From NCBI GenBank assembly GCA_025603075.1, contig MU626265.1, positions 1-64,000 on the forward strand: DNA of 64,000 nucleotides, given 5' to 3'. Numbering within the stretch: the stretch's first letter is position 1; each line of letters starts with the position of its first letter. Below the pieces are notes generated by a model that ran no database searches, was not told where the DNA came from, and worked only from the letters and a program-made list of their open reading frames with translations. Shown here in pieces: positions 1-49,707 of the stretch. The position numbers were made by a program, and so were the translations under genes. Origin of the DNA: Neoconidiobolus thromboides FSU 785. Its lineage: Eukaryota > Fungi > Entomophthoromycota.

Positions 1-732
1 ATCCTTACTGCATCTAAAAAATATCGTTTAGTAAGGTCATAGTTAGAGTGAGATAAACTAATATAAGATAATAAGCCTAAAGCTACCACACAATTATAGC
101 TTGGATTAGAATAAGACTGGGGTAAAGTTGCTTTTATTCCCTTCAATGACTTTCCATAAATTTGTTTATAGCATATACTATTATGTGGAAGCGTAAACCG
201 AGAAAGGACAGCAATTAAAGCATATGACAATATATTTGGTTCATTTTTTGTTAAAATCTCTCTCAAGTTAAACTTATCTAACCATAATCTAAATGGATCT
301 ACAATTTTATGGAAAAAAAGAGGACCATGCTTTAAAAAGTGATAATAAGCTTGATCTATTTTCATTGTGTCACTACATTTGAAAGCTGTATTGGTAATCA
401 GAGTTGGCGCAGTTTTATTAATTTTACGTTTCTTGTGTAACATATTCTCAAGTTGAGAAATCTTTTTCAAGATTTCACTATTGTTATACTTTTTTTCTTG
501 ATTTATTATTTCATATTTCTTATGAGCCCATTTTAAATATTCTAAACATAAATAAAATATGAGATATTAATAAAGCATTAAGTTAATTACCAATTGCCTG
601 TCCTTTAAGTTCATTATTTGAACTTGAGTCCAATTGCTTGAATATATCATTTAATATGCGATCGATGTTATTTAACCTGAACTCTACTAAACCTACTCTA
701 CTTCTTATCTTTTCTTTTGATTTTGACTTCAT
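1..732 (-). CDS. Fungal transcription-factor-like (MHR) protein, family A paralog; 3' end truncated by window edge
   Basis: Exon 1 732-591 (142 nt, MKSKSKEKIRSRV...), GT-AG intron 590-542, exon 2 open from 541 to the edge (EYLKWAHKK...SYSNPSYNCVVALGLLSY...LDAVR). Colinear with the 22540 and 24759 genes. Absent from the ORF track because no stop lies in the window. Confidence 0.85.
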
Positions 733-9096: not shown

Positions 9097-10846
9097 TTAA
9101 TTTAAATATATACTTATTTCTTCTATTAAATCTGGATGCAGCTGAAATCGATGGATACAGCACTTGATCTGGTCTAAGGCATTAGTAGAATCTTTGGAAT
9201 GCCTTTTGTTATCGGATTTAGATATTATATAAAGTTCTTTGATTAATAACACACATTTTGCTTGTGCTTCATTAACCATAAACATATCATCATCCCTCAA
9301 ACTCGAAGTTTGATGTGATAAATTAAGAAGCGTGAAAAAACTAAAATAGGCTTGGTAATAAAAAGGGACACGAATATTGGCTTGAAGCTTATATTTAGTA
9401 TCAAACTGGTGTATTTTACTAAACATTAAAGTTTCATGATTCAAATTTTTATTTAAACTTTTGTTTAAGCAATATGTAATAACTTGGTTAGCATGATTAA
9501 ACAGCAACTTTAACGTTGGCCCTATAAATCGTACAGGTTGAGGGTAAATCATGACAGATGGGTAATAAAGTGTCATAATACTATGTTGGATTAGTACTTT
9601 AATATACCTTTTGAAATTGAAATTATGATCATTTGCTCTCTCCTTTAATTCGGTCTCACTATAATCACTTTCTTCTCTTAGTAGATTTTGATTTTGTATT
9701 ATATTAATGAATTTAAACAATTTGTGAACTCGCTTTGAGGCAGAACCAAATCATCAGTGGGTATATTCGAATAATTATTTGAAAGCTCATACTTTTCTTT
9801 TACGTTTTGTATATGAGTTGCTATTTTAATATTTACTCCAATAAGATCTTTGATAAAAAGATATGGATCTTTGTCTACAGTTTCACACCGTATTCGCTTA
9901 CTATTGGTATTATTTTTGTTATGGTTCTTTCTGAAGAAATATAATGGCTCTTTTATTTCAAATTTAATAAAATACATATCTGCAGTATAATAAGAAAGGG
10001 TTAAATGATTGAGATAAAGGGTTTTCCAAATCCTTCTGCCTCGAGATAATTCATTATATCTCATGTCCAAAATATCTAGCTCATTAAACGAGGAATCATT
10101 TATATTATAGCTTAAAGATTGGACCATTCTTATTGCGCCTAGTAAATACTGTTTAGCAAGGTCAAAGTTTGAATGAGATAGACTAATATAAGATAATAAT
10201 CCTAGAGCTATCCCTTGGCCGTAGCTTGGATTAAAATACGATTGAGGCAAAATTGCTTTTATTCCTTTTAATGATTTTTTATAAATTTGTTTATAAGCTA
10301 TACTACCATGTATAACAGTAAAACGAGCAAAGAGAACAATTAAAGTATATGATAAAGTAGTAGGCTCTTTATTTGCTAATATTGCCTTCGAATTAAATTT
10401 TTCAAACCACAGTTTATATGGATATATATTCTTTACAAAGAAAATCGAGCCTTGCTCTAAAAAGTGGCTATAGGTCTGATACACTGTTATTGAGTCTATG
10501 TTTTTTATTATTGTTTCATTTGGTGGATGTGAAAATGTGGTTACAGCTTCAAAATTTCCATCCAATAAGAGTTTATAATAGAAAATCTTTTTTAAGATTT
10601 CATCATTACTATACTTCTCTTGATTTATTATCCTAAACTCATTTTGAGCCCAATTCAAATATTCTAAAAATGAATCAAATACTATAAAATATTAAAATGA
10701 TTACCATATACTTTTTGCCTAAATTCTAAATTTGAATGTGAGTCCAATTGTTTAAATATATTATTTATTGAACTATCAATACTATCTAACTTTGATTTTA
10801 TTACATCTACTCTACTTCCTGCTCTTCTTTTTGAGCTTATCTCCAT
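9097..10846 (-). pseudogene. Family A TF-like paralog with a single frameshift near 9710 (pseudogene or assembly error)
   Basis: Exon 1 10846-10705 (142 nt), intron 10704-10664, exon 2 from 10663. ORFs 9699-10658 and 9097-9720 are the two halves of a paralog, offset by an apparent 4-nt loss. Confidence 0.8.
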
Positions 10847-22539: not shown

Positions 22540-24274
22540 ATGGAACCAAAAACGAAGACAAAGGCAAGAAGTAGGGTAGAAGCATCAAAATTAAAATTAG
22601 ATAATGTTGATCACTTATTAAACAATATAATAAAACATCTAGACGCTCACCCAAACTTGGAATTTAAACAAAAAGCATTTGGTAAATATTTGAATATTTA
22701 AAGCTATAAATTAATTGTTTTTAGAATACTTAAAATGGGTCAAAAAAACACTTAACATCATAGTTAAAGAAAAGGATTGTAATAACAATAAACAGGTCAC
22801 CAAAGAAGTTTCTCAATATAAAGCTATGTTGGTTGGAAACTTTGAAGTTGATATCACTTTATCACCCTCAACAAATAATATAGATTTAATAGGAGGAAGT
22901 CAAACTTATAGTCAGTTTTTAGAATATGGCTCCGTCTTTCTAGGAAAGGTTATGGATCCATACAAATTATGGTTGGATAAACTTGATTTAAAGGCAATTT
23001 TAACAAAAAAAGAACCTAGTATTTTATCTTATACATTGATTCTACTTCTTGCTCACTTTACCCTTCCACGTGACAGCGTAGCTTATAATCAAATTTACAG
23101 GAAGGCTTTACAGGGAATAAAAGCAACCTTATCTCAATCTTATTCTAATCCATGCTACAATCATGTGGTAGCTTTACGATTACTAAGCCTAGTTAATTTT
23201 TTTCATTCTAATTTTAGTCTTGCCAGACGTTATATTTCGGATGCTGTAAGGATGGCTCAATGTTTAGGATATGATATTAATGACTCTTCATTTGATGCAT
23301 ATGGTGTTACAGATATAAGGTACAATGAGTTATCTCGAGGTAGAAAGGTTTGGAAAATGCTTTACTTTACCTACCTAATTCTTTCATTTTACATTTCAGA
23401 TATGCCCTTTGTCAGATTTGAAGTAAAAGATCCCCTACATTTTTTTAGAGAGAATCAAAGTATATACAATAATAGAGAAAAAACAGATTACAAGGTTGCT
23501 AATGAAGATTCATATAAACATATAAAAAATTTCATTGAAGTAGTTTTAAAAATATTTACTCATGTACAAAAGGTAAAAGAAAATTATAATATTTCAAGCG
23601 ATTGCTCTATAATACCTTCCAATGAACTGCTTTTACCACGAAGTGAATTTATAAGTTGCTCAACTATATTAACGAGTTTAATTCAGCATCTAAAGTTAGT
23701 AAAAGATGAATGTGAATACACTAAAGAAGAAATAGAGATAAAGATAAATGATCATGAGTTTAATTTTCTAAGGTATCTTAAAGTATTAATACAATACACC
23801 GCTATTGTACTTTATTATCCATCTGTGATGGTTTATCCTCAGCCTATTAACTTTACGAAGCCAAAATTAAAGCTATTATTTAAGCATGCTAACCAAATCA
23901 TTACATATTATTTAAATAGTAACTTAAGTGAAAATTCGGATTGTAAGATTTCTACTAAAGTGTATCAGTTTGGTTCTAAAGATGGATTTGATTCTGTCAT
24001 CGACATGCCATTTCACTATCAGGCATATCATTCTTTTTTTGTCCTCATTAATTTATTACATCAAACATCAATTTTGCAATATGAAGATATAATAATGATC
24101 AATGAATCAAAAACAAAATGCGTGATGCTAGTCAAAGAACTTTATAGAATCTCTAAATCTAATAATACACATTCCAAAGATTGTGCTAATAGATTAAATC
24201 AGATTAAGCAATGTCTCCCTCGATTTCAGTTATCTATAAATTTGATACAAAAGATATCCATATACTTAAATTAA
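22540..24274 (+). CDS. Fungal TF-like (MHR) protein, family A, no Zn2Cys6 cluster
   Basis: Exon 1 22540-22681 (142 nt), intron 22682-22724, exon 2 22725-24274. Motifs AVRMAQCLGY and GRKVW. Confidence 0.85.
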
Positions 24275-24758
24275 CTTTATTTAAATAAATTATGGATTTT
24301 TCTACATATCCATATCTCCAACCTCCTTATTTTACTTTTACTATCTAGTTTAATTTAAACTCAAAACTTAACTATTTCTTAGTTTTAGTATACTGAAAAA
24401 TCACTTGTTACACCTGATGTCTTAAATAACCTTATAAAATAGTTTCTTTGCTCTAGTATTTGACTAAAACTTTGACTTTATGCATACAAAAACAGATAAT
24501 TAATAAAAAATAATATTTTTGTATGAACTTTGTAATCGATTTAAATTTAATTGGAACTTTTATCCTGGATTCTAATTAACTTAAGTTTACCAAAAGTAAA
24601 AATTAAAATTTTAAATACTTTTAGTTGTTACTTTATTTGGCAAGTGGTTAATTCATTGATTTGGCATTAACAAAATTGACAATTTCATCTTTGTGAGTTC
24701 AAAATTAAATTAAATACGATCATAAATAGTAGAAACCTAAGGAATAAAAAAGAAAGCT

Positions 24759-26506
24759 ATGAAATCAAACTCAAAGACGAAGATAAGAAGTAGGGTAGAT
24801 ATATTTAAATTAAAGTTAGACAGAGTTGGTTCTTTATTAAACAATGCATTTAATCAACTGGATTCTCATTCAAACTTAAAAGTCAAACAAATCGCATATG
24901 GTAGTTATCTTTAACTCTTATAATGGCTAATTTATTTTTAGATTATTTAAAATGGGCTCAGAAGGAGCTTGAGGCTTTAAATAGAGACAGCAACTACACA
25001 GAAAATAATAAAATCTTCAAAAAAATTTCACAATTTGAGGCTATATTGGATAGGAACTCAAAGGTAAATGCTGCTTCATCCTTGTCAGTAGACGAAACAG
25101 TATATGTAAATATAGGATCAATGAAAGTATATCAGACTTATGGTGAATTTATAGAGAACGGTACTGTCTTTTTTAAAAAGGTTATGGACCCAAGCAAATT
25201 ATGGGTTGAGGAATTAGATTTAAAAAGAATTCTAGAAAATAAGGAGCCTAATATTTTATCATATACTTTAATTGCACTCCTCTCTAGATTCACTCTTCCA
25301 CGCAATAGTATGAACTACCAACAAATTTATGGGAAAGCTTTGCAGGGGGTAAAAGCAACCTTACCACAAGCTTATTCTAATCCAAGTTACAATCATGTGG
25401 TAGCCTTAGGATTATTATCTTTTATCGGTTTGTATCGCTTAAATTTCAGCTTTGCTAAGCGATATTTTTTGGATGCTGTAAGAATGGCCCAATGTCTAGG
25501 TTACAATATTAGTAATTCTTTATTTGATGAGATAGATGCTACTGATGTAAGGTATAATGATTTATTAAAAGGTAGAAAGATTTGGAAAACCCTCTACCTT
25601 ACATATTTAGTCCTTTCATCTTGTATTTCAAATATGCCCTTCATCAAATTTGAAGTAAAAGATCCCTTGCACCACTTTAAACAGAACCAAAACAACTACA
25701 ATGCCAATAAAGTGTTGTGTTCAGAAATTTCAAAAGAGAGTCGATACCTATGTGTTAGAAATTTCATTGAAGTAAACATAAAAATAGCAACTCATATACA
25801 AAAGGTAAAAGAAAGTTATGAGACTAATAAAGATTACTCTAAAATACCTCCCAATGATTTATTATTGCCGCAAAAAGAATTCATAAACTGCTTGACAATA
25901 CTAATAAATTTAATTCAAGATCGAAAATTAGCAAAAGACGAAAGTGAATATAGCAAAGGAGAACTAGATGAGAGAGTAGATGACGATGGGTTCAATTTTG
26001 AGAGATACATTAAAATCCTAATTCAACATACTATAGTTACGCTTTACTATCCATCTGTTATGGTTTATCCTCAACCTGTTCCTTTTACAAGCCCAGAATT
26101 AAAACTATTATTTAATCATGCTAATCAAGTCATCACATTTTATTTAAACAAAGGTCTAGATAAAAAATTTGACCGCGAAACTTTTACTAGAATGTATCAT
26201 ATTAATCCCAAGCATAGATTCCAGGCCATCATAATACCATTTTATTACCAAATATGCTATTGTTTTTTCGCACTTATTAATTTGTTACATCAACCGTCAG
26301 TTCTAGATCCTGAAGATATATATATGATTGATGAGTCTGAAACGAAATGTTTATTATTTGTCAAAGAACTTAGTATAATATCTAAATCTGGTAATGTAAA
26401 GCAGGCTAAAAATTCAATCAATGCTTTGAATCAGATCAAGTATTGTATCCATCAGTTTCAGCTGTCTGAAGATTTAACACAAAAGATACACGCATACTTA
26501 AATTAA
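24759..26506 (+). CDS. Fungal TF-like (MHR) protein, family A, tandem paralog
   Basis: Exon 1 24759-24900 (142 nt), intron 24901-24941 with GCTAAT branch site, exon 2 24942-26506. Motifs AVRMAQCLGY and GRKIW. Confidence 0.85.
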
Positions 26507-30963: not shown

Positions 30964-33900
30964 CTATGCTAACACTTCTATTTTGTTTTGTATAGGATTA
31001 CTAACGCTATTTGCTTCTAAGCTATTAAACTCTAACTCAACTAATCCGCCTGAGACTGGAAGTTTAGTATTTCCTATAAGGTAGTGATCAATCTCACGTG
31101 CTGCTTGCCTACCTTCGTTTATACCCCAAACAATCAATGACTGTCCACGGCGACAATCTCCCGCTGCAAACACCCCTTTTACTGAAGTAGCATATTGATC
31201 TTTTGGAGTTGAAATATTTGATGCTTGAGTAGTATCTAACCCTGCTTCTTTAACAACCTTACTTTCAGGTCCTAAGAAGCCCATTGCTAATAAAACTAGA
31301 TCGGCTTCAAAGAATTTTTCTGATCTTTCAATCTCTTGCATCTTCCATCTTCCATTACTATCTTTCTCCCATTGTACTCTTACAGTATTAATTCCTTTAA
31401 CATTACCATTTTCATCAGTAACAAATTCTTTGGAAAGTATACAGTATTCTCTTGGGTCTCTCGAGTATTGCTTTTGTACTTCTTCATGACCATAATCGAC
31501 TTTGAATACCCTTGGGAACTGTGGCCATGGATTATCGTTACCACGTTGTGCTGGTGGCTCTGGCAAAAGCTCAAAGTTCACGATAGACTTAGCTCCATGA
31601 CGCACTGATGTACCAATACAATCGCAACCTGTATCTCCGCCACCAATAACGATTACATTCTTGTCTTTAGCTGAAATGTAACTATCCCTATCTTTAAACT
31701 GAGAGTTTAACAATGCAGAGGTATTTTTTTGTAAAAAGTCCATTGCAAAGTAGATACCATTAGATTGTCTATTTGGAATGTTTAAATCTCTTGGCCAAGT
31801 TGCTCCGGTTGCCATCAACACTGCGTCATTATTTCCTTGGAGTTCACCAAAAGAGACATGAGTACCAACCTCGGTATTAAGCACAAATTGAATTCCTTCT
31901 TCTTCGAGTAGATCCAACCTTCTCTGGACTATTTTTTTGTCCAACTTCATGTTGGGAATTCCGTACATCAAAAGTCCTCCTGCACGATCATTACGGTCAT
32001 ACACTGTGACTAAGTGACCTGCTTTATTAAGTTGATCTGCTGCTGCAAGTCCTGCTGGACCCGATCCAATAATTGCAACCTTTTTACCAGTACGAAATTT
32101 AGGTGCTTTAGCAACGATCCAATTCTCTTCAAATCCTTTGTCAATAATAGCACATTCAATACTCTTAATACTTACTGGGGATGAATTTATGCCTAATACG
32201 CATGCCCCTTCACAAGGAGCAGGACAAACTCTACCAGTAAATTCAGGGAAATTATTGGTCATCATAAGACGATCAAGAGCTTCTCTCCATTTGCCTTTGA
32301 ATACTAGATCATTCCATTTAGGTATAATATTTCCAATAGGGCAACCAGTATCGGACTGACAAAATGGTACACCACAATCCATACATCTTGCAGATTGTAC
32401 TTTAAGTTCACTTGGCTTAAGACGATGATTGACTTCATTCCAGTCTTTTAGGCGAGAATTGGGCTCACGGTAATGATCACCCCTTCTCTTATACTTGATA
32501 AATCCACGAACCTTATCAGCCAGTTTAAGCTTCTTTTCAATTAATTCCTCATCGGGTGTAACGTCTTCAATATCTCCAATAGCTTTATGTTGATGTAAAT
32601 TTTTACTTCTGTTTTCTTCGAGTTTGGCATCCCCATTAATGTGCCCGTTAGTATGACCATTTACATGTCCATTAGTCTTTACTTGCTTAGCTTCCTCTTC
32701 TTTTTTCTTTAACGCTAACTTGTAATCAATCGGCATAACTTTTATAAATTGGCTTAAATTAGCATCAAATGAATGATAAACTTCTTTTGCGATTTCAGAG
32801 CCTGTCTTGATATAATGCTGATAAATTAACTCTTTAAGCTCGCTGATATCTTGTTTATCCTCCACGCTTTCTAAATGGACCATTTCCTTATTGCAGTTTT
32901 CACTAAGTACTTTGTCTCTATTTAACACATATGCTATTCCTCCACTCATACCTGCAGCAAAATTTCTTCCTACGTTTCCAAGGATGACTACCCTTCCTCC
33001 AGTCATGTATTCACAACCATGATCACCTACTCCTTCAATAACAGCAGTTGCTCCAGAATTTCTAACAGCAAAACGCTCAGCTGCAACACCACTAATAAAT
33101 GCAGATCCAGAAGTGGCACCATATAAACACACATTTCCTACAATAATGTTTTCATTTGCCTTGAACTTTGAAGCCTTTGGTGGATAAATAGCAATAATAC
33201 CACCTGAAAGACCTTTACCAACATAATCATTAGCATCACCTTGAAGTTCCAATGTGACACCTGGTGCTAAAAAGGCTCCAAAACTTTGACCAGCGGACCC
33301 TTTTAAGAAGACGTGAACTGTACCATTTGGGAGGCCTTCCTCTCCATGTAGTTTAGATATTTGGTAAGATAAAGTGGAACCGAGAGTACGATCAGTGTTA
33401 ACTATCTCAGTATCAATAGTTATAGGTTCTTTATTCGTTATAGCCAATTCGGCTTCTGCAATTAACTTGTTATCTAATCGAGTATGAAGTTTGTGATCTT
33501 GTTTTCTAACACAGTATGTAGCTGCCCCAGGACGAAGCTTATAAGCAGGTACCAAAATTGAACTCAAATCTAAGCTTGCTGCTTTACGGTTTTCAAACGG
33601 TAGGTTTAGCTTTAATTTTTCGCATCTACCTACCATCTCGTTTATAGTTCTAAGCCCTAATTTAGCCATGATTTCTCTAAGCTCTTCAGCAACATAGTAA
33701 AAGAAGTTAATAACATGCTCCGGTAATCCAGTAAATTTAGCTCTAAGTTCAGGATCTTGAGTTGCTATTCCTACTGGACAAGTATTAAGATGACATTTTC
33801 TCATCATAGTACATCCCATTGCGATCAAAGGCGTGGTTGCAAAACCCCATTCTTCAGCACCAAGTAAACATGCTAACGCTACATCTCTTCCTGTTTTAAT

Positions 33901-36900
33901 TTGTCCATCAGTTTGAAGCACAACTCTACCACGAAGATCATTGAGTACCAAAGTTTGATGGGTTTCAGCAAGCCCCAACTCCCATGGTAATCCAGCATAT
34001 TTAATACCTGTCCATCTAGATGCACCTGTACCACCATCATGTCCAGAAATTAAGATATGGTCAGCTTTTGCTTTAGCAACTCCAGAGGCAACAATCCCTA
34101 CTCCAACTTCCGAAACAAGCTTAACTGAAACCCTTGCCCTTGGATTGGAAGTCTTTAAATCATAAATGAGTTGCTTGAGATCTTCGATAGAATAAATGTC
34201 GTGATGAGGTGGGGGGCTAATAAGACCAACACCAGCAGTAGATTTACGTGTTTTAGCAATATTCTCAGATACCTTGTGTCCTGGAAGTTCACCTCCTTCA
34301 CCTGGTTTTGCTCCCTGCGCCATCTTGATTTGAAGCTCATCTGCATTTGTTAAGTAAAAGCTAGTAACTCCGAACCTTCCAGATGCAACTTGTTTAATAG
34401 CAGAACGTAAGTTTTTACCATCAACTAATCCAGAGGCTCTTTGTGGGTCTTCACCTCCTTCTCCAGTATTACTTTTGCCTCCAAGCTCATTCATGGCAGC
34501 AGCAAGAGTGGAATGTGCTTCCATAGAAATAGAACCATAACTCATAGCACCAGTACAAAATCTTTTTACAATTTTGTCCCAAGGCTCAACCTCATCAATT
34601 GGAATTCCTTTACTTTTTTCAAAATCGAAATCAAGTAACCCTCTTAGTGTACAGTTACGGATTGAATCATGGCATGCTTTTGCATACTCATCATAAGCAT
34701 TTTTATTTTTATTGCGTACAGCGTCTTGAAGTTTAGCAACAGTCACAGGCTCGTTGATATGTTTTTGACCACCTTTACGCCAATGATATTCTCCTACTTC
34801 TGGAAGACCTTTGATATTTTCTGTATATCTAGTAGGATAGGCAGCTTCGTGAAGTCGAATAGCATCTTGCGCAAGCATTTCAAAAGTAGAACCCTTAATT
34901 CTAGAAGCGGTACCATTAAAACATTTTTCAATAACTTCCTCACTAATACCAAGAGCCTCAAAAATTTGAGCTCCTTTATAGGATTGTAAAGTAGATATAC
35001 CCATCTTTGACATGACTTTCAATATACCATTACTGGAAGCTTTTTTGTAATTTTTTATTAACACTTGGCCATCGATTTCTTCTTCCAGTAAACCATCTCT
35101 TTTTAATTTAAGGATCGCTTCAAGAGCAAGGTAAGGGCATATAGCATCTGCACCATATCCTAAAAGTACACAAAAATGATGTACTTCTCTTGCTTCACCA
35201 GTTTCAACTACCAAAGCAACTTTAGATCTTAATTTATTACTAATAAGATGTTGATGAACAGCACCTGAAGCTATAAGAGAACTAATAGGAATATTGTCTA
35301 CATCAGCTTCGTTATCTGATAAGACAATTACTTTAACGCCTTCATTTATTGCTTCGACTGCGCTTTCGCATAACTCGTTAAGTTTCTCTAGGTAGCCTGA
35401 AGGCCCTAATTCCTTTTTGAAAGTTATTGAAAGAGTTTTTACCGACCAATCAGCTACGTACTTTGAAATATTCTTAATTGAAGCAAGCTCATCAATATCA
35501 ATTATTGGAGATGGAAGCGTCATTCTATGACACTGCGATTCCTCAATTTCTAAAATATTTCCCTCTGGTCCAATATAACATTCCAAAGACATGACAATTT
35601 CTTCACGAATTGGATCAATGGGTGGGTTAGTTACCTGGGCAAAGAGCTGGCGGAAATATTCATAAATTGGCCTTACTTGAGTAGAAAGGCAAGCTAAGGC
35701 GTTATCGTTACCCATAGAACCCAATGCTTCCTTTCCTTCTTTTATCATTGGTAAAATAAGGAAATTTATTTGCTCCAATGTAAAGCCAAATACAGTCATT
35801 CTTGGATCTCTTGCAACAGAAACAGGATCTAACACGTAAGCTCTAGTAGGACTATTTTCTAAAGTCACTGCTTTGAGCTCTTCTAAACTAAGCATTTGGT
35901 TGTCAATCCATTTACCAAAGTCTTCGCGTTCCGCTACCTTGCTTTTAAGCTCGGTATCATCAACAATACGCCCTTCAACAGTATCCACTAAGAGCATTCT
36001 ACCAGGCTGCAAACGTCCTTTTTTTATAACAGTGGCTGGGTCAATAGTTATAGTACCTACTTCAGAAGCGCAAACTATTCTATCACCTTCAAGGACATAA
36101 TAACGACATGGTCTGAGACCATTTCTATCTAAGCTTGCACCAATATAACGACCATCAGAAAAGGTAAACAGGGCAGGTCCATCCCATGGTTCCATCAAAC
36201 AAGCAGCCCATTTATAGAACGCTTTCTTTTTTGGGTCCATGTTTGGATTATTTTGCCATGCTTCTGGCGCCATTATCATTACTACTTCTGGAAGAGAAAA
36301 TTTACCGTTCATTAATAAAAGCTCTAAAACATTATCAAAAGCTGCGGAATCAGAACCATCTGGTTCAATAATTGGGTATAGTTTTTCAAGGTCTTTACCA
36401 AAAAAAGTGCTTTTCATAATACCTTCTCTGGCTCGCATCCAGTTTTTATTTCCTCGTAATGTGTTAATTTCTCCATTATGAGCACAGAACCTTAACGGTT
36501 GAGCACGATTCCAGCTTGGAAAAGTATTTGTGGAGAATCTAGAATGGACTAAAGCAAAATGAGCAGTATAACGGTGATTTCCCAAATCTAAAAAGTATTT
36601 ATAAACTTGAATAGGGGATAACTGACCCTTATAAGTTATGTTTTCTGTAGCTAACGAACAAATATAAAACCATTCTTTTAATGTAATATTATGAGAGGAT
36701 ACTTTTCGAAGCAAATAAAGCTTCTTTGTAAAAGTTTTAGAATCAAAAGTTTTATCATTTAAAGTAATAAATGGTTGAAGAATTTTAGGTTCTCTTGAAA
36801 GAGATACGGGTCCTAAAATTGAACTATCTACTGGTACCTCACGCCAACATAGTACGTTAAGGTCAAAAGAGGTAGCAATCTTTTCAAAGCGTGCCTTTTG

Positions 36901-37248
36901 ATCATCGATAGTATTTGGGTTAAAAAATAAATTACCAGTTGCATACTGACCAGGTGGTGGAAGCTTAACCCCTAATATATCAGCTTCTTTATTGAAGAAC
37001 TCATATGGCATTGAAGTCATTACACCAGCACCATCACCATCACGAAAATCAGCACCAGTAGCACCTCTATGGGTCATATTGCATAAAATAACGCTAGCAT
37101 CGCTTACTATTTTATGGCTTGGTATTCCTTTAATATGTGCAGCAAATCCCACGCCGCAAGCATCTTTTTCTAAAGAGGGGTCATACAAACCTTGTTTTGG
37201 TGGTAAGCTCTCGGCCCAGCTTTGGTTTTTATTAATAGTAGAAGGCAT
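30964..37248 (-). CDS. GLT1: NADH-dependent glutamate synthase (GOGAT), fused alpha/beta
   Basis: 2094-aa ORF with CGVGF amidotransferase start, HSRFSTNT, FMN-domain KMAQGAKPGEGG, 3Fe-4S CTMMRKCHLNTC, and C-terminal CMDCG and GSGPAG motifs. Confidence 0.98.
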   Translation of the reverse strand: MPSTINKNQSWAESLPPKQGLYDPSLEKDACGVGFAAHIKGIPSHKIVSDASVILCNMTHRGATGADFRDGDGAGVMTSMPYEFFNKEADILGVKLPPPGQYATGNLFFNPNTIDDQKARFEKIATSFDLNVLCWREVPVDSSILGPVSLSREPKILQPFITLNDKTFDSKTFTKKLYLLRKVSSHNITLKEWFYICSLATENITYKGQLSPIQVYKYFLDLGNHRYTAHFALVHSRFSTNTFPSWNRAQPLRFCAHNGEINTLRGNKNWMRAREGIMKSTFFGKDLEKLYPIIEPDGSDSAAFDNVLELLLMNGKFSLPEVVMIMAPEAWQNNPNMDPKKKAFYKWAACLMEPWDGPALFTFSDGRYIGASLDRNGLRPCRYYVLEGDRIVCASEVGTITIDPATVIKKGRLQPGRMLLVDTVEGRIVDDTELKSKVAEREDFGKWIDNQMLSLEELKAVTLENSPTRAYVLDPVSVARDPRMTVFGFTLEQINFLILPMIKEGKEALGSMGNDNALACLSTQVRPIYEYFRQLFAQVTNPPIDPIREEIVMSLECYIGPEGNILEIEESQCHRMTLPSPIIDIDELASIKNISKYVADWSVKTLSITFKKELGPSGYLEKLNELCESAVEAINEGVKVIVLSDNEADVDNIPISSLIASGAVHQHLISNKLRSKVALVVETGEAREVHHFCVLLGYGADAICPYLALEAILKLKRDGLLEEEIDGQVLIKNYKKASSNGILKVMSKMGISTLQSYKGAQIFEALGISEEVIEKCFNGTASRIKGSTFEMLAQDAIRLHEAAYPTRYTENIKGLPEVGEYHWRKGGQKHINEPVTVAKLQDAVRNKNKNAYDEYAKACHDSIRNCTLRGLLDFDFEKSKGIPIDEVEPWDKIVKRFCTGAMSYGSISMEAHSTLAAAMNELGGKSNTGEGGEDPQRASGLVDGKNLRSAIKQVASGRFGVTSFYLTNADELQIKMAQGAKPGEGGELPGHKVSENIAKTRKSTAGVGLISPPPHHDIYSIEDLKQLIYDLKTSNPRARVSVKLVSEVGVGIVASGVAKAKADHILISGHDGGTGASRWTGIKYAGLPWELGLAETHQTLVLNDLRGRVVLQTDGQIKTGRDVALACLLGAEEWGFATTPLIAMGCTMMRKCHLNTCPVGIATQDPELRAKFTGLPEHVINFFYYVAEELREIMAKLGLRTINEMVGRCEKLKLNLPFENRKAASLDLSSILVPAYKLRPGAATYCVRKQDHKLHTRLDNKLIAEAELAITNKEPITIDTEIVNTDRTLGSTLSYQISKLHGEEGLPNGTVHVFLKGSAGQSFGAFLAPGVTLELQGDANDYVGKGLSGGIIAIYPPKASKFKANENIIVGNVCLYGATSGSAFISGVAAERFAVRNSGATAVIEGVGDHGCEYMTGGRVVILGNVGRNFAAGMSGGIAYVLNRDKVLSENCNKEMVHLESVEDKQDISELKELIYQHYIKTGSEIAKEVYHSFDANLSQFIKVMPIDYKLALKKKEEEAKQVKTNGHVNGHTNGHINGDAKLEENRSKNLHQHKAIGDIEDVTPDEELIEKKLKLADKVRGFIKYKRRGDHYREPNSRLKDWNEVNHRLKPSELKVQSARCMDCGVPFCQSDTGCPIGNIIPKWNDLVFKGKWREALDRLMMTNNFPEFTGRVCPAPCEGACVLGINSSPVSIKSIECAIIDKGFEENWIVAKAPKFRTGKKVAIIGSGPAGLAAADQLNKAGHLVTVYDRNDRAGGLLMYGIPNMKLDKKIVQRRLDLLEEEGIQFVLNTEVGTHVSFGELQGNNDAVLMATGATWPRDLNIPNRQSNGIYFAMDFLQKNTSALLNSQFKDRDSYISAKDKNVIVIGGGDTGCDCIGTSVRHGAKSIVNFELLPEPPAQRGNDNPWPQFPRVFKVDYGHEEVQKQYSRDPREYCILSKEFVTDENGNVKGINTVRVQWEKDSNGRWKMQEIERSEKFFEADLVLLAMGFLGPESKVVKEAGLDTTQASNISTPKDQYATSVKGVFAAGDCRRGQSLIVWGINEGRQAAREIDHYLIGNTKLPVSGGLVELEFNSLEANSVSNPIQNKIEVLA

Positions 37249-47871: not shown

Positions 47872-49707
47872 TTAAAAAACTATTCCATAATAACCTAATT
47901 TGTCTTCAAATACCTTGGGTAACTGAAACCTTGATATTACATTTGATAATTGAGTTAAAGCTTCTGAAGCATCCATACGATTTTTTCCAGAAGATTCAGC
48001 AATTGATTTTAACATAATAAGTAAAAATAAAGAATGTTGTTGACTTTGGATAATGATATTAGCATCAATCTCATAAAACCCAGACTCTGATAGATCGATA
48101 ATTGTAAAATAAACGTAAATAATGAATATAGAATGAAAATAAAAAGGTAATTGAAAATGAGACTCTTCTTTTTTTGTTTTAGGGAGCACCAGCTCCATAG
48201 TACACGTATTTTTAGATGGGGCATAAAACAGCTTAAATGTACTTAAATAATAAAATGTAACTAAATTAGCTGAGCAGAAAAGTAAGTTAATCTCTTCTTT
48301 TGAAAAAATAACCGGTTTGGGATAAACTAATACAAAAGGATAGTATAAAAATATTAAAACCAGTTGCAAAAGCATTTGTGTATGAACATTGATTCCAATA
48401 TCTGGTTCATTAATTATTGTTAAATCTAAAGTTTTAGTTGAGTTATTAATGTTTACTTTGAGTAATTCAGTTTCAAAGTGTAAATTTAATTGATACTTTT
48501 TTTCCAAGTTTAGCATTGAGGTCAAAATAACATAAAACTGGCTAGGTGGAAGCCTTAATTGTTCTAAAGTGATTGTAGCTAAATCATTGTTACTCATAGT
48601 AGAGTGTTTAACAGTTTGAATATGAGAAGTTATTTTTGAAAACACTTCAATTAATTCTTTGTTATATTCTCCAATGAATAATTTTTCTTGCCATTTATAA
48701 AACGGATAATTAGCCAAGTTTTCCTTATTTTTGGTTGCTACTAAATTTTTCGAGTAAAACTTAATATTGGAAAAATGAGCAGAATGACTCAATTGTGGAA
48801 GGTTGGTTGAAATGGTACTAAATATCATATAATAGAAGCTTAACACAGCCCATAATTTTTCTTTTACTTCTTTACTAATAGTTCCATTCTTAATGTCTAA
48901 CCTTTTATTACCTTGATCATATCCTAAAACCTGTGCCATTCGGATAGCTGAACTAAAATATACAATAGCAAGCTGGGACGAATAAGTAGTCAAACTTATA
49001 TGTGAAAGCATAATTAATGCGATTACATCTTCATAGGTAGGTGTGTTATAAGCAACAATTAACTCTTTACGGGCGTTTCTTACGCTATTTTTATACAAAA
49101 GATGGTAATTAGCGTTATCTTTTGGAGCAGTAAAACGAGCTAAAAAGGCTATAAAAGCATAAGATAAAGAGTTATGGTTCTTTTTAGTGATTATTTGAAA
49201 TAGTTGCTGTTTAGTGAGCAGTAAATTATACATATCAAAGGTTTGAATATATAATTTTAATCCATTTTTTAAAAAAATACCATAAGACTGAATATCAGGA
49301 CCTAAAGCTTGTGGTGGCTTTTTTTCAACTACAATATCATTATTATCATAAAATATAACAACCTTCTTTAAACTATTTATTATTTCACTTTCAAAACAAT
49401 GAAGTTGTTGTTCAACACAATGGTCGAGTATTGACTTCTCATGCTGGCTGTTTAGTATCCGAATGTATGAACAAATATATTTCAAATACGCATAGAATGG
49501 ATAAGATTGGCTTGGATTAACTAATTGAATTTTCTTAAACAACATCGTATATTTAACAGCTAAAGCTTCTAAAGCTTCTAATCTTGCCCTCTTTCTATCG
49601 ATATCACTTCTCACTTTTAAATTTACCAAATAACCCCTTGAATCTAAAGGATGTGATACTCTTAAAACTTGAACATTGCTTCTTTTATTTTGCGTCTGTT
49701 TCAACAT
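47872..49707 (-). CDS. Divergent fungal TF-like (MHR) protein, intronless, no Zn2Cys6 cluster
   Basis: 611-aa ORF. SYAFIAFLARFT, YNTPTYEDVIAL, AIRMAQVLGY and FLYYP align with family A. Confidence 0.8.
   Translation of the reverse strand: MLKQTQNKRSNVQVLRVSHPLDSRGYLVNLKVRSDIDRKRARLEALEALAVKYTMLFKKIQLVNPSQSYPFYAYLKYICSYIRILNSQHEKSILDHCVEQQLHCFESEIINSLKKVVIFYDNNDIVVEKKPPQALGPDIQSYGIFLKNGLKLYIQTFDMYNLLLTKQQLFQIITKKNHNSLSYAFIAFLARFTAPKDNANYHLLYKNSVRNARKELIVAYNTPTYEDVIALIMLSHISLTTYSSQLAIVYFSSAIRMAQVLGYDQGNKRLDIKNGTISKEVKEKLWAVLSFYYMIFSTISTNLPQLSHSAHFSNIKFYSKNLVATKNKENLANYPFYKWQEKLFIGEYNKELIEVFSKITSHIQTVKHSTMSNNDLATITLEQLRLPPSQFYVILTSMLNLEKKYQLNLHFETELLKVNINNSTKTLDLTIINEPDIGINVHTQMLLQLVLIFLYYPFVLVYPKPVIFSKEEINLLFCSANLVTFYYLSTFKLFYAPSKNTCTMELVLPKTKKEESHFQLPFYFHSIFIIYVYFTIIDLSESGFYEIDANIIIQSQQHSLFLLIMLKSIAESSGKNRMDASEALTQLSNVISRFQLPKVFEDKLGYYGIVF

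What the first reader, a model, noticed from the sequence alone, without database searches (positions are those of the whole stretch)
22540..26506. Expanded family of fungal TF-like MHR proteins that lack the Zn2Cys6 DNA-binding cluster
Seen: four close paralogs (1-732, 9097-10846, 22540-24274, 24759-26506) share a 142-nt first exon with ATG at the same position and a phase-1 intron. Exon 1 encodes a basic stretch plus a leucine heptad-like segment (KIRSRVDIFKLKLDRVGSLLNN) with no cysteines. Exon 2 carries AVRMAQxLG and RKxW motifs. Established: these motifs mark the middle homology region (Fungal_trans, PF04082) that normally follows a Zn2Cys6 cluster and dimerisation coil, and in Pdr1-type factors this region senses ligands. 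Inference: this may be a lineage-specific repertoire of headless sensor or dominant-negative modules that heterodimerise with DNA-binding partners. This is the best candidate for an undescribed system in the window.
Basis: partly seen in the sequence, partly recalled or inferred. Interest (0 to 1): 0.75.

Follow-up and report, generated by a model that had tools for sequence, protein, structure and literature searches.

The report
Headless fungal transcription-factor-like gene family
This insect-pathogen relative (Neoconidiobolus thromboides) carries a tandemly expanded family of Gal4-type regulator genes that begin just after the point where the zinc-cluster DNA-binding head should be. This is a clear exception to the recent claim that such "headless" proteins are nearly always annotation errors.

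Summary
The window is contig C8 of Neoconidiobolus thromboides FSU 785. It carries four close paralogs, each with a 142-nt exon 1, a 41-49-nt phase-1 intron and a roughly 1.55-kb exon 2. One is cut by the contig end and one is frameshifted. A fifth, intronless paralog lies at 47872-49707.

The genes encode a divergent middle homology domain (MHD). Evidence: hhalign E 6.8e-8 against canonical Zn2Cys6-MHD genes of the same genome, Cep3 as the best solved structure (Z 11.4), and Fungal_trans clusters as the best ESM Atlas matches.

No zinc cluster is present. The Pfam Zn_clus model finds 117 sites in the genome, none on the contigs that hold the core family's arrays. Not even a half-motif occurs in the window or in 124 kb of family loci.

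The N-terminus aligns with the linker and coiled coil that follow the cluster in canonical factors. The same build occurs in Conidiobolus coronatus and Entomophthora muscae.

The genome holds at least 18 intact core genes, about 10 distant ones and about 7 decayed copies. dN/dS is 0.19-0.41.

Function as non-DNA-binding partners or co-regulators is inferred, not shown. Expression could not be checked. Another first-stage note (s1-250495) flagged the same family on another contig.

The parts
22540..22681 (+). Gene A, exon 1 (142 nt; MEPKTKTKARSRVEASKLKLDNV...; no Cys)
22682..22724 (+). Gene A, phase-1 intron, 43 nt, GT..AG
22725..24274 (+). Gene A, exon 2 (divergent MHD; Pfam Fungal_trans E 1.1e-4, 21.8 bits, just under the 23-bit cut-off)
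24759..24900 (+). Gene B, exon 1 (142 nt; MKSNSKTKIRSRVDIFKLKLDRV...)
24901..24941 (+). Gene B, phase-1 intron, 41 nt
24942..26506 (+). Gene B, exon 2. With exon 1 it equals public model P0001 (568 aa). Modelled as all-alpha, pLDDT 75.9, with a Cep3-like fold.
9097..10846 (-). Paralog with exon 1 10846-10705, intron 10704-10664 and exon 2 10663-9097. The reading frame is broken by a frameshift near 9710, so it is a probable young pseudogene or an assembly error.
1..732 (-). Paralog cut by the start of contig C8: exon 1 732-591, intron 590-542, exon 2 from 541 to the contig end
47872..49707 (-). Fifth, intronless family member (611 aa) with a longer N-terminus that carries the same KVRSDIDRKRARLEALEAL motif and no Cys cluster

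Best explanation
These are real genes of an Entomophthorales-restricted family. It derives from Gal4/Cep3-type (Zn2Cys6-MHD, 'CeGAL') transcription factors that lost the zinc-cluster head.

Each protein starts a few residues before the segment that corresponds to the post-cluster linker and coiled coil (consensus [KR]-x-[IVP]-R-S-x-x-D followed by an amphipathic helix). It then continues into a three-helix N-terminal bundle and a roughly 450-residue all-alpha MHD.

In N. thromboides the family grew by tandem birth-and-death duplication. There are at least 18 intact core genes, about 10 distant ones, about 7 copies cut by contig ends and about 7 decayed copies. They sit in nearly pure arrays on contigs C8, C70, C65 and C165.

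Shown here: the gene structure, MHD homology and fold, absence of any Zn2Cys6 coding potential, conservation of the headless build in three genera, and purifying selection.

Inferred: without a sequence-specific DNA-binding head, the proteins act in the nucleus as partners or co-regulators. They would use the retained dimerisation helix and/or the MHD interface to pair with themselves or with some of the roughly 117 canonical zinc-cluster factors, and so modulate (activate, titrate or gate) those factors. This would resemble FarD working alongside FarA in Aspergillus niger. I put about 0.85 on the descriptive part and about 0.45 on the co-regulator mechanism.
For: Gene model:
- The 142-nt exon 1 and phase-1 intron sit just before (D/E)YLxW in all window copies.
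- The same intron position and N-terminal motif occur across paralogs down to 25% identity, and in a relative from an unrelated Logan sample.
- The public model P0001 is identical to the gene B model.

MHD identity:
- Pfam Fungal_trans: E 1.1e-4 for gene A; 3 of 20 members hit, best 2.5e-5.
- C. coronatus relatives reach the cut-off (P0023, 23.8 bits; P0046).
- hhalign of the family against 8 canonical Zn2Cys6-MHD genes of the same genome: probability 94.6%, E 6.8e-8 over the core motif.
- VIA-align top two of 48,161 chains are Cep3 (6p7v_B Z 11.4, 6f07_A Z 10.9, 344 residues aligned).
- The best ESM Atlas cluster is 100% Fungal_trans, TM 0.51/0.48 over 395 residues.

No head:
- Zn_clus has 117 genomic hits, none on C8, C70, C165, C170, C353, C30 or C41.
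- CxxCx6-8C occurs 0 times in the window outside spurious GLT1 frames and 0 times in 30 family loci (124 kb), against 2 per gene in 16 of 16 canonical genes.
- It is absent from 60 kb of array sequence apart from one isolated chance match on the opposite strand.
- It is absent within 4 kb upstream of the C. coronatus genes.

N-terminus equals the post-cluster linker and coil: compare KKRGPPRSYIEAIDSRLHRMEHIF (canonical P0049) with KSKPRSYADRARIRVEELEKLV (E. muscae P0056) and SKTKIRSRVDIFKLKLDRVGSLL (gene B).

Selection: dN/dS 0.19-0.41 at dS 0.57-1.45. Intact 500-codon frames sit beside copies with 9-23 stops.

Distribution: only 44 representatives at E<=1e-3 among 1.84 billion. All strong ones are headless and come from N. 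thromboides, C. coronatus, E. muscae or unlabelled samples.

Precedents: FarD is a genuine MHD-only regulator (PMC10512302). The MHR of PnPf2 mediates homodimerisation and cofactor binding (bioRxiv 10.64898/2025.12.09.693112).
Against:
- Most members score below Pfam's threshold. Gene B has no Pfam hit at all.
- Foldseek against PDB gave nothing below E 1e-3. Z of about 11 is within the range that helical repeat proteins can reach by chance (note).
- The N-terminal helices are modelled as an intramolecular three-helix bundle at pLDDT of about 60 rather than a dimeric coil.
- The homodimer prediction gave no verdict.
- No partner, localisation or ligand is known.
- The quick tree does not resolve whether all headless lineages share a single loss. 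C. coronatus P0046 groups with canonical outgroups on long branches.
Confidence: 0.6

Rival explanations
1. The proteins bind DNA by themselves. The short basic stretch plus the following coiled coil would act as a bZIP-like or Gal4-linker-like DNA contact that replaces the zinc cluster. The family would then be a new class of sequence-specific factors rather than co-regulators.
For: A conserved basic run sits directly before a conserved amphipathic helix in every subfamily. From my own knowledge, the equivalent Gal4 linker contacts the DNA backbone.
Against: The basic run is only 4-8 residues long. The exon-1 peptides have no bZIP or other DNA-binding Pfam hit at E<=1. The most conserved residues are R-S and D, not a basic array. 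The helices are modelled as an intramolecular bundle.
Confidence: 0.12
2. The family has left transcription altogether. The MHD scaffold would have been reused for another role, such as a cytoplasmic adaptor or sensor. Alternatively it is a fast-turnover, largely dispensable array with no coherent function.
For: The family is very divergent from canonical MHDs. Canonical factors appear only at E of about 1e-4 in a search of 1.84 billion representatives. Pseudogenisation is high and arrays are nearly pure tandem repeats, often at contig ends. There is no consistent neighbouring gene.
Against: The core MHD motifs are retained: PS..V(I/V)AL and A(V/I)RMAQ.LG. The post-cluster linker and coil are conserved in three genera. 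dN/dS of 0.19-0.41 shows constraint.
Confidence: 0.15
3. Annotation or assembly artefact. A zinc-cluster exon would exist upstream, or the genes would be fragments of normal Zn2Cys6 factors. The CeGAL study found this for more than 85% of 'MHD-only' database entries.
For: The general prior from PMC10141177. No RNA evidence was obtained here.
Against: No Zn_clus HMM hit lies on the family contigs. No half-motif occurs in any frame of the window or of 30 loci with 1.5-kb flanks. Gene B has only 484 nt between gene A's stop and its own ATG. Each copy has its own ATG a few codons before the conserved motif. The same start is seen in C. coronatus, E. muscae and a Logan sample. They are too short to encode a 28-residue cluster.
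Confidence: 0.04
4. The copies in this window are silent pseudogene remnants of a dying family.
For: One of the five window copies is frameshifted. At least six heavily decayed copies lie elsewhere. Expression is unverified.
Against: Genes A and B and the copy at 47872-49707 keep 519-611 uninterrupted codons in 26% GC DNA. They also keep intact splice signals and have dN/dS of about 0.2-0.4.
Confidence: 0.05

Closest known systems
CeGAL family (Zn2Cys6 + MHD factors: Gal4, Cep3, Pdr1 and others; Pfam PF00172 + PF04082)
   Same: The MHD is homologous by hhalign (E 6.8e-8), and the best structural match is Cep3. The core motifs are kept. The N-terminus matches the linker and coiled coil that follow the cluster.
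   Different: There is no zinc cluster anywhere in or near the genes. The MHD is so divergent that most members fall below Pfam's threshold. The family is restricted to Entomophthorales.
FarD of Aspergillus niger (genuine MHD-only regulator, PMC10512302)
   Same: [quoted passage not shown] It is genetically required alongside a canonical Zn2Cys6 factor (FarA).
   Different: FarD is a single-copy, 817-aa protein confined to Eurotiales. No Aspergillus protein appeared among the 44 hits of the profile search, so this is an independent loss of the head. The family here is expanded to dozens of tandem copies.
Cep3 (CBF3 kinetochore subunit; PDB 2veq, 6f07, 6p7v)
   Same: It is the best solved structural match, over about 344 residues of the MHD (Foldseek probability 0.98).
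   Different: Cep3 keeps its zinc cluster and is a single essential kinetochore protein of budding yeasts. Sequence identity is about 10%.
Headless dimerisation-only regulators such as Id (HLH without a basic region). This is an analogy from my own knowledge.
   Same: The architecture has lost the DNA-contacting part but kept the dimerisation part of a large transcription-factor family.
   Different: The fold is unrelated. Dominant-negative action is not shown for the present family.

Membership tests
CeGAL (Zn2Cys6-MHD supra-domain, PMC10141177) | N-terminal CX2CX6CX5-16CX2CX6-8C binuclear zinc cluster (PF00172) | tested here: not met
   PF00172 six-frame search: 117 hits in the genome, none on the family contigs. 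Half-motif regex: 0 in the window and 0 in 30 loci, against 2 per gene in 16 of 16 canonical genes.
CeGAL (Zn2Cys6-MHD supra-domain, PMC10141177) | Middle homology domain downstream of the DNA-binding domain | tested here: met
   hhalign probability 94.6%, E 6.8e-8 against canonical genes of the same genome. Cep3 is the top structural hit at Z 11.4. The top ESM Atlas cluster is Fungal_trans, TM 0.51.
Pfam Fungal_trans (PF04082) | Whole-protein score at or above the gathering cut-off of 23 bits | tested here: inconclusive
   Gene A scores 21.8 bits, below the cut-off. Gene B has no hit. 3 of 20 members hit at E<=0.01. No family locus appears in the six-frame PF04082 search. C. coronatus relatives pass: P0023 at 23.8 bits and P0046 precomputed.
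Genuine MHD-only proteins (FarD-like class) | Headless architecture conserved among orthologs or paralogs, not a gene-model error | tested here: met
   The same start and motif occur in more than 15 paralogs, a Logan relative, C. coronatus and E. muscae.
Genuine MHD-only proteins (FarD-like class) | Orthology to FarD itself | tested here: not met
   The profile search of 1.84 billion representatives returned no Eurotiales protein among the sources checked.
Genuine MHD-only proteins (FarD-like class) | Regulatory phenotype or expression | not testable with these tools
No RNA run is on record.
bZIP factors | Extended basic region plus leucine zipper recognised by bZIP profiles | tested here: not met
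   The exon-1 peptides give no bZIP hit at E<=1. The basic run is only 4-8 residues.

The most novel reading that the evidence does not exclude
Entomophthoralean fungi evolved a second, combinatorial layer of transcriptional control. In this reading, dozens of decapitated Gal4-type proteins each keep the dimerisation helix and a rapidly diversifying MHD pocket. They pair with the canonical zinc-cluster factors as signal-sensing or dominant-negative subunits, as a fungal counterpart of Id/HLH or Aux/IAA-type partner repertoires. This would show that the MHD can act on its own, which the CeGAL authors left as an open question.
Probability: 0.2. Interest if true: 0.75.

Novelty: new variant of a known kind. 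Interest (0 to 1): 0.5.

Why it matters
The CeGAL study (PMC10141177) concluded that more than 85-90% of 'MHD-only' entries are annotation errors. [quoted passage not shown] This family is a well-controlled counter-example. It has dozens of paralogs under purifying selection and a conserved start codon just after the cluster position. The same build occurs in three genera, and no zinc-cluster coding potential lies within reach. In N. thromboides the family is about as numerous as the Pfam-detectable MHD set (33 six-frame hits). Standard transcription-factor censuses would miss nearly all of it, because most members fall below the Pfam threshold and are annotated as 'hypothetical protein'. It therefore offers a natural system for asking what an MHD does without its DNA-binding head. 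It also affects how regulatory repertoires of early-diverging, insect-associated fungi are counted.

Tried and rejected
1. RNA evidence. The look-up of sequencing runs listed 5 holders, none on record as RNA. No read-level test of expression, splicing or 5' ends was therefore possible.

2. Complex prediction on a homodimer of P0001 residues 1-110 returned 'no answer' with a score of 0.01. This is neither support nor evidence against.

3. Foldseek against PDB gave nothing at E<=1e-3. Cep3 (2veq) appeared only at rank 33. The VIA-align wide search and the ESM Atlas search were needed to see the fold.

4. A profile search of PDB sequences gave 0 hits at E<=10.

5. Pfam on the exon-1 peptides gave only a chance-level DUF1280 hit.

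6. The CeGAL paper's text and 11 supplementary files contain no mention of Conidiobolus, Zoopagomycota or the C. coronatus accessions.

7. I looked for a consistent neighbour gene in the arrays and found none. The arrays are almost purely family genes.

8. The quick ML tree did not resolve the deep order, and the careful search did not finish in the time allowed. A single origin of headlessness therefore remains unproven.

9. Isolated Cys-rich half-motifs in L047 (337-369), L055 and L056 (1535-1570) were inspected. They are short ORF fragments without the second half of a cluster, 1.9-2.4 kb away or on the other strand. I rejected them as heads.

10. Joined spliced model. For gene A I searched exon by exon by reference and left the joined protein out. 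For gene B the public database protein P0001, which equals the spliced model, was used by its id.
Full report
**Source and setting.** The window is contig C8 (bases 1-64000) of a 24.6-Mb, 799-contig assembly with about 26% GC. A word-index protein search returned a 100% identical public protein, 'hypothetical protein K502DRAFT_346024 [Neoconidiobolus thromboides FSU 785]' (P0001, 568 aa). It also returned four to five paralogs from the same strain. N. thromboides belongs to the Entomophthorales (Zoopagomycota). Other genes in the window are ordinary: glutamate synthase, three MFS transporters and an agmatine/peptidyl-arginine deiminase.

**Checking the observation.**
- Gene A has exon 1 at 22540-22681 (142 nt), a 43-nt GT..AG intron and exon 2 at 22725-24274.
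- Gene B has exon 1 at 24759-24900 (142 nt), a 41-nt intron and exon 2 at 24942-26506.
- The two minus-strand copies also have 142-nt first exons (732-591 and 10846-10705) followed by 49-nt and 41-nt introns.
- In all four the intron splits a codon after its first base, and exon 2 opens with (D/E)YLxW.

Three corrections apply. The copy at 1-732 is cut by the end of the contig. The copy at 9097-10846 has a frameshift near 9710: 'LVLPQSEFTNCLNSLI*' continues in another frame as 'NIIQNQNLLREESDY'. Public model P0005 hides this behind a doubtful intron. A fifth, intronless member lies at 47872-49707 on the minus strand.

**Is it a middle homology domain?** Pfam alone is marginal.
- Gene A hits Fungal_trans at E 1.1e-4 with 21.8 bits, against a cut-off of 23. 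Gene B has no hit.
- Only 3 of 20 aligned members hit at E<=0.01.
- A six-frame PF04082 search of the genome finds 33 sites, none in this family.

Three independent lines settle the question.
1. A profile of 20 family members (A1) was compared with a profile of eight canonical Zn2Cys6+Fungal_trans genes from the same genome (A2). It gave probability 94.6% and E 6.8e-8 over 122 columns. These cover the hallmark helices, including 'PS..V(I/V)AL' and 'A(V/I)RMAQ.LG'.
2. An AlphaFold2 model of P0001 (pLDDT 75.9, pTM 0.71, all-alpha) has Cep3 as its two best matches among 48,161 solved chains. Cep3 is the only zinc-cluster factor whose MHD has been solved, according to the CeGAL paper. The matches are 6p7v_B at Z 11.4 and 6f07_A at Z 10.9, with 344 residues aligned over model residues 108-561. 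This Z is not outstanding for a helical protein. It is, however, the top rank, and Foldseek gives Cep3 (2veq) probability 0.98.
3. The best ESM Atlas cluster by shape is 100% Fungal_trans (TM 0.51/0.48, 395 residues). The second best also carries Fungal_trans.

More distant relatives in Conidiobolus coronatus pass Pfam's own threshold (P0023; P0046). UniProt names them as regulatory-domain proteins.

**Is the head really missing?** This is the critical point. The CeGAL study (PMC10141177) showed that most database 'MHD-only' proteins are gene-model errors, with a Zn2C6 exon within 1 kb upstream.
- The Pfam Zn_clus model searched in six frames finds 117 sites in this genome, so the method works here. 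None lies on C8, C70, C165, C170, C353, C30 or C41. On C65 and C133 the nearest sites are separate genes several kb away.
- A deliberately loose half-motif (CxxCx6-8C, no stop) occurs nowhere in the window except in wrong-frame glutamate-synthase sequence. It occurs nowhere in 30 family loci totalling 124 kb with 1.5-kb flanks. It occurs twice in each of 16 canonical control genes.
- Sixty further kb of array sequence are also empty, apart from one chance match on the opposite strand.
- Gene B has only 484 nt between gene A's stop and its own ATG.
- Each paralog has its own ATG 1-36 codons before the conserved motif. The exon-1 peptides hold 0-1 cysteines.

**What the N-terminus is.** Across all subfamilies, exon 1 carries [KR]-x-[IVP]-R-S-x-x-D followed by an amphipathic helix. 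Canonical factors that surfaced at the weak end of the profile search show the familiar post-cluster segment, for example '...C|TYNGIKKKRGPPRSYIEAIDSRLHRMEHIF' (P0049) and 'KKRGPKAGFIEELEARVRELESRL' (P0047). The Entomophthora muscae family member starts 'MEYCPRKSKPRSYADRARIRVEELEKLV' (P0056). Gene B starts 'MKSNSKTKIRSRVDIFKLKLDRVGSLL'. The register (basic, R/K-S/G, aromatic or any residue, hydrophobic, acidic, then a heptad-like helix) is the same. I infer that the proteins begin about 5-10 residues after the position of the last cluster cysteine. They would thus keep the linker and dimerisation coil and lose only the head. This is a pattern-level alignment, not a statistical test.

**Family size, dynamics and range.** The A1 profile finds 55 matches at E<=1e-5 in the genome:
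- 18 full-length uninterrupted core genes;
- about 7 copies cut by contig ends;
- the frameshifted copy in the window;
- about 7 copies with 9-23 stops;
- about 10 distant ORFs of 500-650 aa (on C165, C159, C1, C23 and C91), which also lack clusters.

The arrays on C70 and C65 consist almost only of family genes. Pairwise dN/dS among six close paralogs is 0.19-0.41 at dS 0.57-1.45.

A full HMMER search of 1.84 billion representative proteins found only 44 at E<=1e-3. All strong hits are headless, and canonical Zn2C6 proteins appear only at E of about 1e-4. Named sources are N. thromboides, C. coronatus NRRL 28638 and E. muscae. The rest are unlabelled JGI or Logan contigs.

A Logan relative (L047) has the same exon 1, the same phase-1 intron and a divergent methyltransferase gene only about 450 nt upstream. 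The C. coronatus loci have no half-motif within 4 kb upstream. The E. muscae locus has only one atypical Cys-rich ORF fragment, 2.4 kb upstream.

In a quick ML tree the window's four close paralogs fall in a starred clade of five N. thromboides genes, and the C65 array forms another such clade. E. muscae P0056 groups at 100% with the N. thromboides C165 subfamily. Deep branches are long and unresolved. The headless build therefore predates the split of these genera in at least one subfamily, while the core expansion is specific to Neoconidiobolus. A single loss is plausible but not demonstrated.

**Mechanism.** The following are shown: gene structure, domain identity, absence of a head, constraint, and tandem birth and death. 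The function is inferred. My preferred reading is that the proteins are nuclear co-regulators. They would pair through the retained coil and/or the MHD interface, either with themselves or with canonical zinc-cluster factors. Three precedents support this. The MHR of PnPf2 mediates homodimerisation and cofactor binding (bioRxiv 10.64898/2025.12.09.693112). The Cep3 MHD forms a large dimer interface, as cited in that paper. FarD, a true MHD-only protein, is required together with FarA for ferulic-acid induction in A. niger (PMC10512302).

Against over-reading: the N-terminal helices are modelled as an intramolecular three-helix bundle at modest confidence. The one dimer prediction allowed gave no verdict. 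Expression is untested. The rivals are intrinsic DNA binding by the basic-plus-coil segment, a non-transcriptional role, a gene-model artefact and silent pseudogenes. They are weighed in their own sections.

**Novelty.** MHD-only proteins as a class are known and debated, and FarD is characterised. No paper found in three full-text searches describes this family or an expansion of this kind. The N. thromboides members are annotated as hypothetical proteins with no Pfam domain. I rate it as a new variant of a known kind. It is an independent, ancient, Entomophthorales-specific decapitation of the Gal4-type architecture, expanded to dozens of copies.

Another first-stage note of this scan (s1-250495) reports a 'tandem family of MHR-like transcription-factor paralogs with no DNA-binding zinc cluster' on another contig of the same genome. 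This agrees with the census here.

**Procedural notes.** The spliced protein of gene A was never joined; its exons were searched separately by reference. For gene B the public protein P0001 was used by id.

Noticed in passing
window 9097-10846 (-), break near 9700-9720: This paralog is intact on both sides of a single frameshift (330 and 217 codons). Public model P0005 removes about 19 conserved residues with an intron that no paralog has. It is either a very young pseudogene or an assembly error in an A/T run.
   Followed up: partly
L003:3050-3110 (G000:C70, gene at 22625-24391, minus strand): The family intron here is 42 nt, in frame and free of stops. Public model P0002 (583 aa) reads through it ('GNHFNILLAFNLFL'). 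This is probably an unspliced-intron model error, or a case of intron retention that keeps the frame.
   Followed up: partly
G000 contig ends: C8:1, C70:1, C568:1, C62:4, C492:6, C170:82: At least six family copies are cut by contig ends, so the arrays break the assembly and the true copy number is higher than counted.
   Followed up: no
G000:C60:29498-30214, C77:12809 and 64835, C141:45268, C14:20097: These are strong Pfam Fungal_trans hits in long ORFs on contigs that have no Zn_clus hit. They may be further headless or differently headed MHD genes, unrelated to the present family.
   Followed up: no
window 22540-24274: Gene A seems to have no full-length public model. The only database entry for it (P0003, 482 aa) starts at an internal Met in exon 2.
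   Followed up: no
window 30964-37248 (-): A glutamate synthase gene (2094 aa, single ORF) stands out at 38% GC against about 26% elsewhere. Highly conserved coding sequence in an AT-rich genome is the likely reason.
   Followed up: no
L054:6765-7826 and L055:40-1371 (G000:C165): A phytochelatin-synthase-like ORF and an amino-acid transporter are interspersed among the distant ~600-aa family members on C165. The C70 and C65 arrays, by contrast, are nearly pure.
   Followed up: no
It was left out of all later searches.
   Followed up: no
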